A DNA stretch of 64,000 nt, from the sequence record AP017925.1, one strand, 5' to 3'. The notes under the pieces are model-generated. The model did not search any database and was not told where the DNA came from. It worked only from the letters and a program-made list of their open reading frames with translations. A program made the translations under genes and the position numbers. Positions 3,438 to 6,655 of the stretch are shown piece by piece. The first letter of the stretch is position 1. Each line of letters starts with the position of its first letter.

Positions 3438-3625
3438 CGACGTAGCTCCTGTGCTGCTACACGTGCTTCCAGATTCGAATCCTGCAACTCTTCAACCTGC
3501 TTGAGCAGGGCAGCCATCCGGAAACCAGCATCGCGACACTCAGCGCAGTCACTGGACTGCAGATGTTCAACGAGTTGTTCGTCAGTGAACTCTCCATCGA
3601 GTTCTTTCTGATGACAGATAGTCAT
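3434..3625 (-). CDS. small Cys/His-containing hypothetical protein (63 aa)
   Basis: Track ORF 3434..3712. Start moved to MTICHQ at the ATGA overlap (3622-3625). Contains C-H...H...CxxC. Confidence 0.6.
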   Translation of the reverse strand: MTICHQKELDGEFTDEQLVEHLQSSDCAECRDAGFRMAALLKQVEELQDSNLEARVAAQELRR

Positions 3626-3852
3626 TGCCCCTCCGGCCAGACAACAGCGTCCGCACGGCCAGTGAACACAGCCCACGCGGCACGGAAGCGAGCCTTGATG
3701 CCGCAAGCGCATTGCGGTCGAGCAGGAACCCAGCGCCCGTTGATCTGGGCTTGAGTGGTATTGATAGTCTCGCAGAGACTACGCAGTCCCCACATGGTAG
3801 GTTCGTGTTTGAATTCCGGCTTCAGTTTCTTGAACCATTGCAGCAACTTCAT
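3622..3852 (-). CDS. hypothetical protein (76 aa)
   Basis: ATGA-coupled on both sides. Confidence 0.7.
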   Translation of the reverse strand: MKLLQWFKKLKPEFKHEPTMWGLRSLCETINTTQAQINGRWVPARPQCACGIKARFRAAWAVFTGRADAVVWPEGQ

Positions 3853-4301
3853 TGTTTCTCTCCTGCGTTTGCCAGTATGGCGGCTGACTTGTTAAATACT
3901 TCTTTGATAACATCCGCGAGCGCCTTCAGGCCGTCGGGAGTATCGACGTGGTAGCTGCCGCAGGCGAAGCCTTTGAACCACTCGCGCGGGCTCGGGCAAC
4001 CACAGTGACCTGCAACGCGCACAACGCGACCGTGGGTAGCGTGCAAAGCTTCTGCGGTATCGACGTCGAGTCCGGGACCTTCAACCATCCAGTAATACCA
4101 GCCGCGAGTGAATTTCCAGCCATGCAGTACGCCCAGTACCGATGTCTTCACTTCACCGGATTGGCGGCGAAGCATATCAGCCAGCCATTCGGGTGGTTGA
4201 CCAGCATCTTCTTGCAGCGTCGGAATACCGGCTGCTTTGAGTTCGGCACGTAGAATATCATCGGTGTCTGCGTGATCACCGGCTCTGTTGGGGAAACCCA
4301 T
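3849..4301 (-). CDS. hypothetical protein (150 aa)
   Basis: RBS GGGAGTAG. Protein-like composition, with WYYW and HCGCP motifs. Confidence 0.75.
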   Translation of the reverse strand: MGFPNRAGDHADTDDILRAELKAAGIPTLQEDAGQPPEWLADMLRRQSGEVKTSVLGVLHGWKFTRGWYYWMVEGPGLDVDTAEALHATHGRVVRVAGHCGCPSPREWFKGFACGSYHVDTPDGLKALADVIKEVFNKSAAILANAGEKQ

Positions 4302-4339
4302 TTCTACTCCCTAAAGTAAGTTAACGGCATAAAAGGAAT

Positions 4340-4592
4340 GCAGGGGGTGGCGAAACCAAGGCTAACCCGTCCCTGATCCCGCCACCCTTCTCCCACACCG
4401 CCCTCACCGCGTGCTCGCGGCCAGAGGACTACATTGGGAAGGCTGCGTCGACAGACGCTCCGGCGGCTAGCGGGCCGCACCATGGCGTCAGCTGTCTTCC
4501 CTGCGTGGGGAGCTTTGCGGCCCGCGATCTCGCGAGGCGCGCTCCCCATCGTTCAGCGCGGGCGAGTCTCTCAATCCCGCCCGCGCCTGAAC
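4340..4592 (-). ncRNA. candidate GC-rich structured ncRNA (~250 nt) at the 3' end of the tRNA array
   Basis: Stems GTTCAG-CGCGGGCG/CGCCCGCG-CTGAAC, GGGGAGC/GCTCCCC, GGGAAG/CTTCCC, a 17-bp GGGTGGCGGGATCAGGG/CCTTGGTTTCGCCACCC hairpin with G-U pairs on the minus strand, and a possible long-range GCAGG/CCTGC pairing. Visibly more GC-rich than flanking DNA. Confidence 0.6.
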
Positions 4593-4610
4593 ACTTCACT
4601 ACAACAATAC

Positions 4611-4718
4611 TGATCCCTCGGGTTAGGATTCGAACCTACGACCTGCGTCTGGTATGGTAGGCCGGCCGCTGAGGACCCGCCTTGGTGACGCCGCTCTGCC
4701 GGACTGAGCTACCGAGAG
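4611..4718 (-). tRNA. tRNA-like RNA with a 37-nt insert in place of the anticodon loop (identity undetermined; ends UCA, not CCA)
   Basis: Acceptor CTCTCGG/CCGAGGG, TA, D-arm GCTC-AGTCCGGCA-GAGC, anticodon stem GCGTC/GACGC enclosing 37 nt (4650..4686), variable region AGGTC, T-arm GTAGG-TTCGAAT-CCTA(A)C. Confidence 0.7.
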
Positions 4719-4733
4719 TATGCTACGGAAAAC

Positions 4734-4809
4734 TGGCTCCAAGGGCTGGGTTCGAACCAGCGACCAACGGCTTAACAGGCCGCTGCTCTACCGACTGAGC
4801 TACCTCGGA
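4734..4809 (-). tRNA. trnN: tRNA-Asn (anticodon GTT)
   Basis: 76-nt canonical cloverleaf: TCCGAGG/CCTTGGA, D-arm GCTC/GAGC, anticodon loop CT-GTT-AA, T-loop TTCGAAC, encoded CCA. Confidence 0.97.
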
Positions 4810-4822
4810 ATACTACTAAACT

Positions 4823-4933
4823 TGGTGCAAAAGGTACGATTCGAACGTACGAAGTCTTTTCCCATCCTTAGATGAGTCACCTTGTGATGATACGGTTGTA
4901 TCTCACTGCCTTAAACCACTCAGCCACTTTCGC
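4823..4933 (-). tRNA. class II (Leu/Tyr/Ser-like) tRNA-like RNA with a 25-nt insert in place of the anticodon loop
   Basis: Acceptor GCGAAAG/CTTTTGC, discriminator A, CCA. Class II-style D-arm TGGCTGAGTGGTTTAAGGCA, T-arm GTACG-TTCGAAT-CGTAC. Stem GTGAG/CTCAT encloses 25 nt (4877..4901) and is followed by a long variable arm. Total 111 nt. Confidence 0.7.
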
Positions 4934-4949
4934 TTGGAAACTACACTCC

Positions 4950-5200
4950 TAGAGCCAGAAGCAAGGCAGCTAACGGCGTCTCCATGACGGTTCTGCTGCC
5001 GCTGCCGAGCTAGTGGCCTAAGGGCTATAGTCTCGCTGCTAACAAATCCATAACTTGAGAGTTGCGCTGATGAACGCTTCTCCCCTACACTTTAACGAGG
5101 ATCATCACTCCTCGCAACTAGAGGCCTTTCGGCGGTAATCCTAACGCTGCCATCCCGGTCAGGGGATGGCCAGCAAACTCGAAGAAAACTAGAGCAGCTA
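4950..5200 (-). ncRNA. candidate structured RNA or leader upstream of the tRNA array
   Basis: Stems GCTG-GCCATCCC/GGGATGGC-AGC, GCC-GAAA-GGC (GNRA loop), GAGGA/TCCTC, and GGCAGC/GCTGCC enclosing CGTC/GACG. No credible ORF. Confidence 0.35.
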
Positions 5201-5288
5201 CTCCAGAGAGTCCTCAAGTGATAGGATACAGATACAGTGTGAGTCTCTGCATGAAATAAAGACAACGTGTATTTTTTTACTCTACTTC

Positions 5289-6164
5289 TTAGTTTGCGCC
5301 AACGAGCCAATTAGCCAAACGCTTGATACCCGCGAGCAACTTGCCGAAGATACCTTGCGGTTTGGACGTAGTAGCAGCGCTAACGGCTTCAGGTTGAATT
5401 GCTGGCTCTGCAACCACTGCTTTCTCTTCAGAGGCAGGAACTTCCGGCTCCTGTTCTACAGGATCGCGAAGTACGATCCCGTCACCGAAGGCCGGGTACG
5501 GTGCTGCGTCGTAGTCTTCCTGATCCATCAGAAGCTCGTTAGTCCACTGGTACGTGGCGTGGAAGCCGCTGAGGATATCGAGCCACCAAACGCTACCAGT
5601 CGGAGACGGCGTGATGGCGATCTTGTGCTCAGTGCCTTCTTCGTCAGTGACGATCAGGCAAGGCATGGCCAGCCACTTGTACTGCTCCTTGATTGTGCGG
5701 CTCTTGAATGCAAACTCCACACGGATGTCGTGCGGCTTCAGGAAGGTGTTTTCGAACTGCTTGTTTACCTTAAGCGAGCGGAACACCGATTCGTATTCTT
5801 GCTTCGCCAGCGCCTCCTTGTTCTTCACGCAGGAGATGCCGAGGTTGCACACAGCATCGCAGAACACGAACCAGCGGTTGAAGCGCTCGGCGAATTCCTT
5901 TGGCGCGAGTTTTTCCTTCTTGATGGCGGACAGTTGGTCGGCCACGATGTGCGGCAAAGCAGCCACGAACTCGTCGCGGTCGAAGTAGTAACCGTCGGCT
6001 TGTGCACGCTCTTCATCGATGTTCTTCTGGACTTCTTCCAGCGTACCGAGGATGCGGTTGTAATTCGGATCGATGTGCTCGATCGCTGCAATTTCTTCAT
6101 TCACCGCAGCCACGCCTGCTGCAATGTCGTCTTGTACTTCCTTCGGGATATTGGAATCACTCAT
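5289..6164 (-). CDS. hypothetical protein (~291 aa)
   Basis: Start moved to MSDSNIP (6164) because the longer track ORF runs through a terminator. Codon usage matches other phage genes. Confidence 0.8.
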   Translation of the reverse strand: MSDSNIPKEVQDDIAAGVAAVNEEIAAIEHIDPNYNRILGTLEEVQKNIDEERAQADGYYFDRDEFVAALPHIVADQLSAIKKEKLAPKEFAERFNRWFVFCDAVCNLGISCVKNKEALAKQEYESVFRSLKVNKQFENTFLKPHDIRVEFAFKSRTIKEQYKWLAMPCLIVTDEEGTEHKIAITPSPTGSVWWLDILSGFHATYQWTNELLMDQEDYDAAPYPAFGDGIVLRDPVEQEPEVPASEEKAVVAEPAIQPEAVSAATTSKPQGIFGKLLAGIKRLANWLVGAN

Positions 6165-6239
6165 GATGGGTCTCTGGGTTAGGGTGCAGTGAGAAGTTGC
6201 ACCAAGATGATAAGGGCTACTGGTTAAAACTAGATTGAC

Positions 6240-6270
6240 GGCATAAAGGGGAGGCAAAACGCCTCCCCTC
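6240..6270 (-). terminator. intrinsic terminator with TTTATGCC tail
   Basis: AGGGGAGGC/GCCTCCCCT stem next to GGCATAAA on the plus strand. Confidence 0.8.
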
Positions 6271-6304
6271 TGGGTTAGTTATTCGCTTTCCCGTAAAACC
6301 TACT

Positions 6305-6655
6305 TCACGATACCGTGTCTTCAATCACGATATCGAAACTTGGTGCTCGAACCAACGCACACGCTCGAACATTCGGCGTCACGTGGTGAGTAACCAGCTC
6401 TAGTCCAGTCTGATGACAGAAAGTGATCAGCTGACTCAGTTTGACAGCTTTAGTTGCCGGTTCGATGAAGGTTTCCCTCATTTCGCCCAGCAGCTGACTT
6501 TTCTTCCGATTAAATTGAACGGATTGATGCCCATCCTTCGTTCGACTACGCGAGAGGACCAGCCTGTTTCCGTCCATTGCTACTGTTGCAGATTCACTGA
6601 CGAGAATGTCGACTTCATCAATCAGGTCAATGCAACGTTTAAAGGCAACGTCCAT
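6305..6655 (-). CDS. hypothetical protein (116 aa)
   Basis: RBS GGAG, lies between two terminators. Confidence 0.7.
   Translation of the reverse strand: MDVAFKRCIDLIDEVDILVSESATVAMDGNRLVLSRSRTKDGHQSVQFNRKKSQLLGEMRETFIEPATKAVKLSQLITFCHQTGLELVTHHVTPNVRACALVRAPSFDIVIEDTVS

What the first reader, a model, noticed from the sequence alone, without database searches (positions are those of the whole stretch)
4611..4718. tRNA-shaped RNA with a 37-nt insert in the anticodon loop
Seen: a perfect 5-bp anticodon stem (GCGTC/GACGC) encloses ACCAAGGCGGGTCCTCAGCGGCCGGCCTACCATACCA instead of 7 nt. The insert can form its own hairpin (AGGC-GG...CC-G-GCCT) with CUCAG near the tip and is bracketed by ACCA on both sides. 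The 3' end is A-UCA rather than CCA, and the T-stem has one bulged nucleotide. Removing 30 nt does not obviously give a canonical Y-U-N-N-N-R loop, so a standard position-37/38 intron is not evident.
Basis: seen in the sequence. Interest (0 to 1): 0.75.

Follow-up and report, generated by a model that had tools for sequence, protein, structure and literature searches.

The report
Anticodon-less tRNA mimic in jumbo phage
A giant phage of the plant pathogen Ralstonia carries, inside its small tRNA gene cluster, a conserved tRNA-shaped RNA gene whose anticodon loop is replaced by a hairpin, so it probably cannot read codons and more likely acts as a tRNA look-alike with an unknown job.

Summary
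The window is Ralstonia jumbo phage RP12 (RP31 is identical here). On the minus strand, 4718..4611 holds a full tRNA body. Its 5-bp anticodon stem encloses 37 nt, an internal loop plus a capped hairpin, instead of a 7-nt loop. Only tRNA-Asn is annotated in this cluster.

Homologues in phages FLC1-1B and FLC4-3B carry a 42-nt insert at the same place. Three stem pairs changed on both sides and still pair. The hairpin base and a following NCCA are conserved, and the hairpin tip is rebuilt from different sequence. It is therefore neither chance nor a fresh random insertion.

Splicing is poorly supported:
- No excision gives a U33/R37 loop in any homologue.
- ARAGORN names three different amino acids for the three copies.
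- There is no bulge-helix-bulge motif, no ribozyme or group I match, and no splicing endonuclease domain.
- RP12 has RtcB, but the FLC phages do not.

A second RP12 gene (4933..4826) also closes its anticodon arm into a rod.

Best reading (about 0.5): a processed, non-decoding tRNA mimic, possibly a decoy in tRNA-targeted phage-host conflict. Rivals are a decaying pseudogene (0.2) and a spliced tRNA (0.1). No expression data exist.

The parts
4611..4718 (-). Element A: the whole tRNA-shaped gene (108 nt)
   Evidence: Unannotated in GenBank AP017924/NC_041911.
4712..4718 (-). Acceptor stem, 5' strand CTCTCGG (C1 start)
   Evidence: Pairs with 4615-4621. Pair 7-66 changes on both sides between FLC4-3B (A-T) and FLC1-1B/RP12 (G-C).
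4693..4709 (-). D arm GCTC-AGTCCGGCA-GAGC, with A14, G15 and G18G19
   Evidence: The stem is identical in all three homologues.
4687..4691 (-). Anticodon stem, 5' strand GCGTC
   Evidence: Pair 27-43 is G-C in RP12 and A-T in the FLC phages (compensatory).
4683..4686 (-). 5' strand of the internal loop (ACCA). It is variable: ATCATC in FLC4-3B and ATTACCT in FLC1-1B.
4659..4682 (-). Insert hairpin AGGC.G.GGTC[CTCAGC]GGCC.G.GCCT. The base AGGC/GCCT is conserved. The FLC tips differ in sequence but still pair and end in GNRA tetraloops.
4650..4658 (-). 3' strand of the internal loop, ACCATACCA. NCCA directly after the hairpin is conserved (ACCA, ACCA, TCCA).
4645..4649 (-). Anticodon stem, 3' strand GACGC
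4622..4644 (-). Variable loop AGGTC and T arm GTAGG-TTCGAAT-CCTA(A)C, with one bulged A in RP12
   Evidence: Pair 50-64 is T-A in RP12 and G-C in the FLC phages (compensatory). The FLC copies have no bulge.
4611..4621 (-). Acceptor stem 3' strand CCGAGGG, discriminator A, then TCA (the FLC copies have CCA)
4734..4809 (-). Normal tRNA-Asn(GTT), 15 nt upstream of A in the same array
   Evidence: 70.9 bits
4826..4933 (-). Element B: a class II tRNA body (long variable arm, A73, CCA at 4823-4825). In its minimum-free-energy fold the anticodon arm is a 9-bp rod capped by AACC. Found only in RP12/RP31.
   Evidence: (35.8 bits)

Best explanation
Element A is a functional, non-decoding tRNA mimic. It is transcribed as the last member of the phage tRNA array (B, Asn, A). 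Its intact acceptor, D, variable and T parts should fold into the tRNA L-shape, so it should be cut out by RNase P and the 3'-end enzymes like its neighbours. Where the anticodon loop should be it carries an internal loop and a capped hairpin of 8-11 bp, so it should not be able to read a codon.

The most likely use (inference, about 0.3 on its own) is as a 'disarmed' tRNA decoy or competitor. It would offer the tRNA body to a host or phage factor that recognises tRNAs, such as a tRNA-targeting defence nuclease. It would stay uncleavable at the anticodon loop and stay out of translation.

Shown here: the anatomy, the conservation with compensatory changes, the lack of any consistent anticodon, and the presence of a second rod-type mimic. 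Inferred: transcription, processing, and the decoy role.
For: 1. Complete tRNA body with the tertiary-contact bases (U8, A14, G15-C48, G18G19, TTCGAAT).
2. Homologues in FLC1-1B and FLC4-3B, whose genomes align with RP12 over only 35% at 77% identity (PMC11530567). They keep an insert at the same site. Three pairs changed on both sides (7-66, 27-43, 50-64). The hairpin base and NCCA are conserved, and the tip is rebuilt from other sequence.
3. No excision gives a U33/R37 loop in any copy. ARAGORN calls the three copies Gly(ACC), Met(CAT) and Val(TAC).
4. The insert is unique in the genome, so it is not a repeat element.
5. Element B in the same array also closes its anticodon arm into a rod in its minimum-free-energy fold.
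6. A lies in register in the array, and no terminator-like site was found between 5189 and 3313 on this strand.
7. Between FLC1-1B and FLC4-3B the flanks differ by 0.6-1% and Tyr and Asp by 0%. A differs by 9.8%, Asn by 29% and Gln by 23%. Most of the differences in A lie in the internal loop and hairpin. This local fast change resembles what is reported for phage tRNAs under attack by tRNA nucleases (PMC10264068).
8. tRNA mimics with the anticodon arm turned into a long stem are known (YrlA, PMC4201824). They sit in phage tRNA arrays and beside rtcB.
Against: - No expression data exist.
- Only two independent lineages are known. None was found in IMG/VR, JGI metagenomes or 201 Burkholderiaceae genomes.
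- The acceptor/T region is imperfect in both lineages: a bulged A and a UCA tail in RP12, and tandem G.A and C.A mismatches in the FLC copies. This could also mean decay.
- Folding energy is not better than shuffles for RP12.
- Rfam's tRNA model does not report the RP12 copy.
- No partner protein was identified, and the neighbouring genes have no known function.
Confidence: 0.5

Rival explanations
1. Decaying tRNA pseudogene. An ancestral tRNA (the body resembles initiator-Met or Pro tRNAs of the host family) took a junk insertion in its anticodon loop and is slowly eroding.
For: RP12 has a UCA tail and a T-stem bulge. The FLC copies have two adjacent acceptor mismatches. The 5' loop strand is not conserved. 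The folding z-score is weak. The closest host-family tRNA matches are tRNA-fMet and tRNA-Pro T arms.
Against: Three double compensatory substitutions and a re-paired hairpin tip are not expected under neutrality. The element survives in phages that share only 35% alignable DNA. Its D arm, T loop and variable loop are as conserved as those of the working tRNA-Asn.
Confidence: 0.2
2. Intron-containing tRNA. The insert is cut out by an unknown endonuclease and the halves are joined by a phage RNA ligase to give a working tRNA.
For: RP12 encodes RtcB (427 bits) and an ATP-dependent RNA ligase. The FLC phages encode the same type of ATP-dependent RNA ligase. 'Enigmatic introns' are reported in Lak megaphage tRNAs (PMC6784885).
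Against: No excision yields a U33/R37 loop in any of the three copies, and the predicted identity differs in each. There is no two-bulge BHB arrangement (by inspection of the folds). No tRNA_int_endo domain was found in RP12. Rfam shows no ribozyme or group I match. The FLC phages carry A but lack RtcB. Other RtcB-bearing jumbo phages have only normal-length tRNAs.
Confidence: 0.1
3. Y-RNA-like adaptor. The rod binds a Ro60/Rsr-type or other RNA-quality-control protein, and the tRNA-like part tethers a nuclease or repair enzyme, as YrlA does.
For: The architecture matches processed M. smegmatis YrlA: a tRNA-like module with an open acceptor stem plus a long stem in place of the anticodon arm (PMC4201824). 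YrlA arrays sit next to the closest bacterial relatives of RP12's RtcB and at the head of a metagenomic tRNA array.
Against: The only RF02553 match in the window scores 29.8 bits against a gathering score of 69. It spans the T arm of tRNA-Asn and the D arm of A, so it is not a real unit. No TROVE domain was found in RP12, and only 2 of 301 sampled host-family genomes gave weak matches. The topology is not permuted, and no conserved YrlA loop sequences are present.
Confidence: 0.07
4. Processing punctuation only. The tRNA shape serves as an RNase P/RNase Z cutting signal that releases the GC-rich structured RNA lying just downstream, as mascRNA does for MALAT1.
For: A is always the last array member in RP12 and the FLC phages. 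It is followed by a conserved spacer and a conserved hairpin RNA region at 4304-4600. No terminator-like site lies between them.
Against: Any tRNA would serve as punctuation. This does not explain the conserved insert or the rapidly changing internal loop.
Confidence: 0.08

Closest known systems
YrlA-type bacterial and phage Y RNAs (Rfam RF02553; PMC4201824)
   Same: tRNA-like acceptor, D and T module. The anticodon arm is replaced by a long stem with internal loops. They occur in phages and in tRNA arrays. M. smegmatis YrlA is cut by RNase P and receives CCA.
   Different: YrlA is circularly permuted: its ends lie in the long stem and its acceptor is closed. It has conserved loop sequences and a Ro60/Rsr partner. 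Element A has tRNA topology with a closed rod, no RF02553 match, and no Ro in the phage. Ro is rare in the host family.
Intron-containing pre-tRNAs (archaeal/eukaryal BHB type) and the 'enigmatic introns' of Lak megaphage tRNAs (PMC6784885)
   Same: An extra hairpin-forming segment sits inside the anticodon loop of an otherwise normal tRNA gene. There is a precedent in huge phages.
   Different: There is no BHB motif, no endonuclease and no canonical loop after excision. The three homologues imply different anticodons.
Phage T4 RNAC and RNAD (species 1 and 2 RNAs)
   Same: Small stable RNAs of still unknown function (PMC9697503). From my own knowledge, they are encoded in the T4 tRNA gene cluster.
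   Different: No sequence comparison was made here, and their shapes are not known to me to match this one.
Phage tRNAs that evade tRNA-targeting defences (PMC10264068; PMC11555353)
   Same: They lie in a phage tRNA array. Change is fast and local, centred on the anticodon arm.
   Different: Those are working tRNAs with normal 7-nt loops. This one has no usable anticodon.
tRNA-like genes directly downstream of bacterial rtcB (seen here in L042, L067, L072, L073, L083, L090, L094)
   Same: tRNA bodies with odd anticodon loops (6-nt loops, no U33, one 20-nt loop). They are found in genomes whose RtcB is 57-66% identical to RP12's.
   Different: They sit adjacent to rtcB and mostly have near-normal loop lengths. 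In RP12, A lies 70 kb from rtcB, and the FLC phages have A without rtcB.

Membership tests
Canonical decoding tRNA (Rfam RF00005) | Cloverleaf with a 7-nt anticodon loop (U33, purine 37) | tested here: not met
   The loop is 37 nt in RP12 and 42 nt in the FLC copies.
Canonical decoding tRNA (Rfam RF00005) | Score above the Rfam gathering threshold (29 bits) | tested here: inconclusive
   The RP12 copy is not reported even at E<=10. The FLC1-1B homologue scores 44.4 bits, and the FLC4-3B copy is not listed.
Canonical decoding tRNA (Rfam RF00005) | Acceptor, D and T stems plus tertiary-contact nucleotides | tested here: met
   Exceptions are a bulged A in the RP12 T stem and two acceptor mismatches in the FLC copies.
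Canonical decoding tRNA (Rfam RF00005) | Encoded 3' CCA, as in the neighbouring phage tRNAs | tested here: inconclusive
   RP12 has A-TCA and the FLC copies have A-CCA.
Protein-spliced (BHB) intron tRNA | Bulge-helix-bulge motif at the exon-intron borders | tested here: not met
   The two single-stranded segments face each other as one internal loop. The 4 nt after a 3-nt 5' bulge cannot pair with the 4 nt before the 3' stem strand (inspection of the folds).
Protein-spliced (BHB) intron tRNA | Excision restores a canonical anticodon loop with the same identity in homologues | tested here: not met
Protein-spliced (BHB) intron tRNA | Splicing endonuclease available | tested here: not met
   PF01974 is absent from RP12. 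Bacterial hosts are not known to have one (my own knowledge).
Protein-spliced (BHB) intron tRNA | RNA ligase available | tested here: met
   RP12 has RtcB and an Rnl-type ligase. The FLC phages have only the Rnl-type ligase.
Self-splicing or self-cleaving insert (group I intron, small ribozymes) | Match to a ribozyme or intron covariance model | tested here: not met
   Rfam at E<=10 over 3500-6500 gives none. At 37 nt the insert is too short for a group I intron.
YrlA / Y RNA (RF02553) | Score of at least 69 bits on RF02553 | tested here: not met
   The only hit scores 29.8 bits and spans parts of two different genes.
YrlA / Y RNA (RF02553) | Ro60/Rsr (TROVE) partner in the same genome or host | tested here: not met
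YrlA / Y RNA (RF02553) | tRNA-like D/T/acceptor module joined to a long stem at the anticodon-arm position | tested here: met
tmRNA | tRNA-like domain plus tag reading frame | tested here: not met
   ARAGORN -m finds none.

The most novel reading that the evidence does not exclude
A and B may be a set of deliberately 'disarmed' tRNAs with an active role.

B has a class II body with A73, and that type of tRNA is charged without reading the anticodon. If A or B is still aminoacylated, it could serve as an amino-acid donor or as a sponge for a synthetase or EF-Tu.

Separately, A's embedded 'helix + NCCA' is a built-in copy of a tRNA acceptor end (a minihelix). It could bait enzymes that act on tRNA 3' tails, such as RNase P, the CCA-adding enzyme, or CCA-tail-cutting immune nucleases.
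Probability: 0.12. Interest if true: 0.8.

Novelty: new variant of a known kind. Interest (0 to 1): 0.55.

Why it matters
Phage tRNA genes are now seen as weapons against host defences that destroy tRNAs. A conserved tRNA look-alike that cannot decode would add a different tool, an RNA decoy or adaptor, to that conflict. Here it sits beside a second such mimic and other unassigned structured RNAs in one 'RNA-only' stretch of a nucleus-forming jumbo phage. It would also warn annotators that 'introns' called in phage tRNAs by eukaryote-mode tRNA finders need not be introns. The phage infects a major crop pathogen and is studied for biocontrol, so host-range determinants of this kind have practical interest.

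Tried and rejected
- **Splicing.** I enumerated every 7-nt loop for the three homologues and none is canonical. ARAGORN in intron mode gives Gly, Met and Val for the three copies. The EndA domain and archease are absent.
- **RtcB link.** RtcB is present in RP12 but absent in the FLC phages, which carry A. Three other RtcB-bearing jumbo phages have only normal-length tRNAs.
- **Y RNA.** The RF02553 hit is an artefact of two adjacent tRNA-like genes. There is no TROVE domain in the phage, and it is rare in the host family.
- **Mobile repeat.** The insert is unique in the genome.
- **More homologues.**
  - Two IMG/VR pattern scans found none.
  - The five IMG/VR loci with ORF131 relatives have no tRNAs.
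  - ORF132 has no relatives.
  - The metagenome pattern scan gave nine chance hits plus L015, which is a tandem YrlA-like array and not a homologue.
  - BLAST of 201 Burkholderiaceae genomes matched only T arms.
- **Expression.** No RNA run holds the locus. Laying four metagenome runs showed only bacterial tRNA-Asn look-alikes and one 65-nt match at 4340-4404.
- **Neighbouring proteins.** No informative Pfam or PHROG family.
- **Not done.** I did not build a covariance model, because MAFFT misaligned the insert and the 3' end. I counted pairs by hand in a script instead.

Full report
**Where the window comes from.** Window 4300-5100 is 100% identical to Ralstonia jumbo phages RP12 and RP31. 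The window is genome positions 127255-191254 of RP12. RP12 is a phiKZ-related phage for which only one tRNA, Asn(GTT), was reported with tRNAscan-SE in bacterial mode (PMC5468394). GenBank annotates nothing at the finding.

**Checking the observation.** The element lies on the minus strand, 4718 down to 4611. A script confirmed the parse against the sequence:
- acceptor CTCTCGG/CCGAGGG
- TA
- D arm GCTC-AGTCCGGCA-GAGC
- G26
- anticodon stem GCGTC/GACGC
- a 37-nt insert
- variable loop AGGTC
- T arm GTAGG-TTCGAAT-CCTA(A)C, with one bulged A
- discriminator A followed by TCA

The insert is a 4-nt strand (ACCA), a hairpin AGGC.G.GGTC[CTCAGC]GGCC.G.GCCT at -13.7 kcal/mol, and a 9-nt strand (ACCATACCA).

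ARAGORN with introns allowed finds just three genes in the whole 280-kb genome: this one, tRNA-Asn and a neighbour. All three lie in this cluster, so the tRNA likeness is not a chance call. Two cautions apply. Rfam's tRNA model does not report the RP12 copy. Its folding energy is no better than that of shuffles (z = -0.5).

**Relatives.** A sensitive BLAST of 50,697 phage records finds the element only in RP12, RP31 and the two Japanese Ralstonia phages FLC1-1B and FLC4-3B. Those phages share only 35% alignable DNA with RP12, at 77% identity (PMC11530567). In both FLC phages it is the last gene of the array Gln-Asp-Asn-Tyr-A. In RP12 the array is B-Asn-A.

Both FLC copies carry a 42-nt insert at the same place, with the same plan: a 6-7-nt strand, a hairpin of about 11 bp, then a 7-nt strand. 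Rfam scores the FLC1-1B copy at 44.4 bits.

Comparing the three copies:
- Pairs 7-66, 27-43 and 50-64 changed on both sides and still pair.
- The D stem, T loop and variable loop are identical.
- The hairpin base AGGC/GCCT and the NCCA just after it are conserved.
- The hairpin tip is built from different letters and is capped by GTAA or GAAA in the FLC copies.

The structure is not perfect. The FLC copies have two adjacent acceptor mismatches (G4.A69, C5.A68). RP12 has the T-stem bulge and the UCA tail.

No further relatives turned up in IMG/VR, near ORF131 homologues, in JGI metagenomes or in 201 host-family genomes.

**Is it an intron?** I listed every way of leaving a 7-nt loop. None gives U33 with a purine at 37 in any of the three copies. 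ARAGORN's best guesses are Gly(ACC) with a 32-nt intron for RP12, Met(CAT) for FLC4-3B and Val(TAC) for FLC1-1B. That is three identities for one gene.

The two single-stranded segments face each other as one internal loop, so there is no bulge-helix-bulge arrangement. Rfam finds no ribozyme or group I intron. RP12 has no splicing-endonuclease domain and no archease.

RP12 does encode RtcB and an ATP-dependent RNA ligase, both outside the window. But the FLC phages, which carry A, have no RtcB and only the ATP-dependent ligase. Three other RtcB-bearing jumbo phages have only normal-length tRNAs. 'Enigmatic introns' have been reported in Lak megaphage tRNAs (PMC6784885). That is a precedent for the appearance but not for a mechanism. 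I put splicing at about 0.1.

**Is it junk?** The insert is unique in the genome, so it is not a repeat element. The compensatory changes and the re-paired hairpin argue against neutral decay. The acceptor and T-stem defects and the non-conserved 5' strand argue for some relaxation. I put a pseudogene at about 0.2.

**A second mimic.** 4933..4826 (element B) has a class II tRNA body with a long variable arm, A73 and CCA. It scores 35.8 bits on Rfam tRNA with 25 nt in the loop. Its minimum-free-energy fold turns the anticodon arm into a 9-bp rod, GUGAGAUAC/GUAUC(A)UCAC, capped by AACC. B has no relative outside RP12/RP31. One three-gene array thus holds two different tRNA bodies that both appear to lack a usable anticodon loop, which makes accident less likely.

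**Known look-alikes.** The metagenome scan pulled out L015, a tRNA array that opens with tandem YrlA-like units (40-42 bits). YrlA is a Y RNA whose tRNA-like module is joined to a long stem where the anticodon arm would be. The M. smegmatis form is cut by RNase P and receives CCA (PMC4201824).

The closest bacterial relatives of RP12's RtcB are flanked by YrlA arrays above the Rfam threshold, or by pairs of tRNA-like genes with odd anticodon loops. So 'tRNA body plus altered anticodon arm' is a recurring kind of non-coding RNA.

Element A is not a YrlA:
- The only RF02553 hit in the window scores 29.8 bits and spans two genes.
- The topology is not permuted.
- There is no Ro60 (TROVE) domain in the phage.
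- Only 2 weak matches were found in 301 host-family genomes.

**A hint about function.** FLC1-1B and FLC4-3B are 99% identical overall. In this locus the flanks differ by 0.6-1.0% and tRNA-Tyr and tRNA-Asp by 0%. A differs by 9.8%, tRNA-Asn by 29% and tRNA-Gln by 23%. In A, 9 of the 11 differences lie in the insert (internal loop and hairpin), and the other two form the compensated 7-66 pair. Fast local change of this kind has been described for phage tRNAs that escape tRNA-cutting host defences (PMC10264068). That A shares the pattern suggests it takes part in the same conflict. This is an inference, not a demonstration.

**Verdict.** The best-supported reading (about 0.5) is a processed, non-decoding tRNA mimic. 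A decoy or competitor role in tRNA-targeted conflict is the most likely mechanism (about 0.3 on its own). It is a new variant of a known kind: tRNA-like non-coding RNAs such as YrlA, and small phage RNAs of unknown function such as T4 RNAC and RNAD (PMC9697503). Expression, end mapping and charging tests would settle it.

Earlier notes of this scan had independently flagged B, the downstream GC-rich RNA and the operon as a whole. I reached the same reading of B from my own folds.

Noticed in passing
window 4826-4933 (minus), CCA at 4823-4825: Element B is a class II tRNA body (long variable arm, A73, CCA). Its anticodon arm folds into a 9-bp rod with an AACC tetraloop. It is unannotated, has lower GC (45%) than its neighbours, and has no relative outside RP12/RP31.
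   Followed up: partly
window 4304-4600 (minus), hairpin about 4552-4591: A GC-rich unannotated stretch lies right after A and is partly conserved in the FLC phages. It includes a hairpin whose stem differs between phages but still pairs, with a conserved loop GGGAWTGAGAGACTCG. An unannotated 81-aa ORF (4304-4549) lies in it and looks spurious.
   Followed up: partly
window 4719-4733, 4810-4822, 4600-4610 and L002 1660-2060 (minus): Each tRNA or tRNA-like gene in RP12 and the FLC phages is followed by a similar spacer, roughly (A/G)GTTT...GTAG. The same spacer follows A, as if a further processed RNA came next.
   Followed up: no
L002 and L003 1776-1851 and 1960-2037: Between the 99%-identical phages FLC1-1B and FLC4-3B, tRNA-Asn and tRNA-Gln differ by 29% and 23%, and ARAGORN still folds both versions of each into a normal cloverleaf. 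The neighbouring tRNA-Tyr and tRNA-Asp are identical. This points to allele swapping or very fast evolution of single tRNA genes.
   Followed up: partly
RP12 genome about 249000-249330 (minus), outside the window: A non-coding stretch contains a perfect T arm, GGAGG-TTCGAAT-CCTCC, preceded by small hairpins. No full cloverleaf is evident. It may be another tRNA-derived RNA.
   Followed up: no
L042, L067, L072, L073, L083, L090, L094 (about 5300-5850 in each): Bacterial rtcB genes 57-62% identical to RP12's are directly followed by one or two tRNA-like genes with abnormal anticodon loops (6-nt loops, no U33, one 20-nt loop). In Lysobacter-type genomes, tandem YrlA units lie just upstream of rtcB instead.
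   Followed up: partly
L015 180-470: A metagenomic tRNA array opens with two tandem YrlA-like units. Tandem units of this kind are read by ARAGORN's intron mode as 'tRNAs with 40-76-nt introns', which is a trap for annotation.
   Followed up: yes
RP12 genome 196759-198051 (ORF209): The whole-genome scan for PF09414 missed this RNA ligase. A direct scan of the protein scores 54 bits. Negative results from the genome-scan tool should be read with care.
   Followed up: yes
window 4340-4404: Two rhizosphere metagenome runs each hold a 28-kb contig that matches this 65-nt stretch with 5 mismatches and 1 gap. This may mean an uncultured relative of RP12 in soil.
   Followed up: no
FLC4-3B 122501-122562 and FLC1-1B 120759-120826 (minus): These are weak tRNA-like matches (27-29 bits, just under the Rfam threshold) away from the main array. 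They may be the 'fifth tRNA' mentioned in the FLC genome paper.
   Followed up: no
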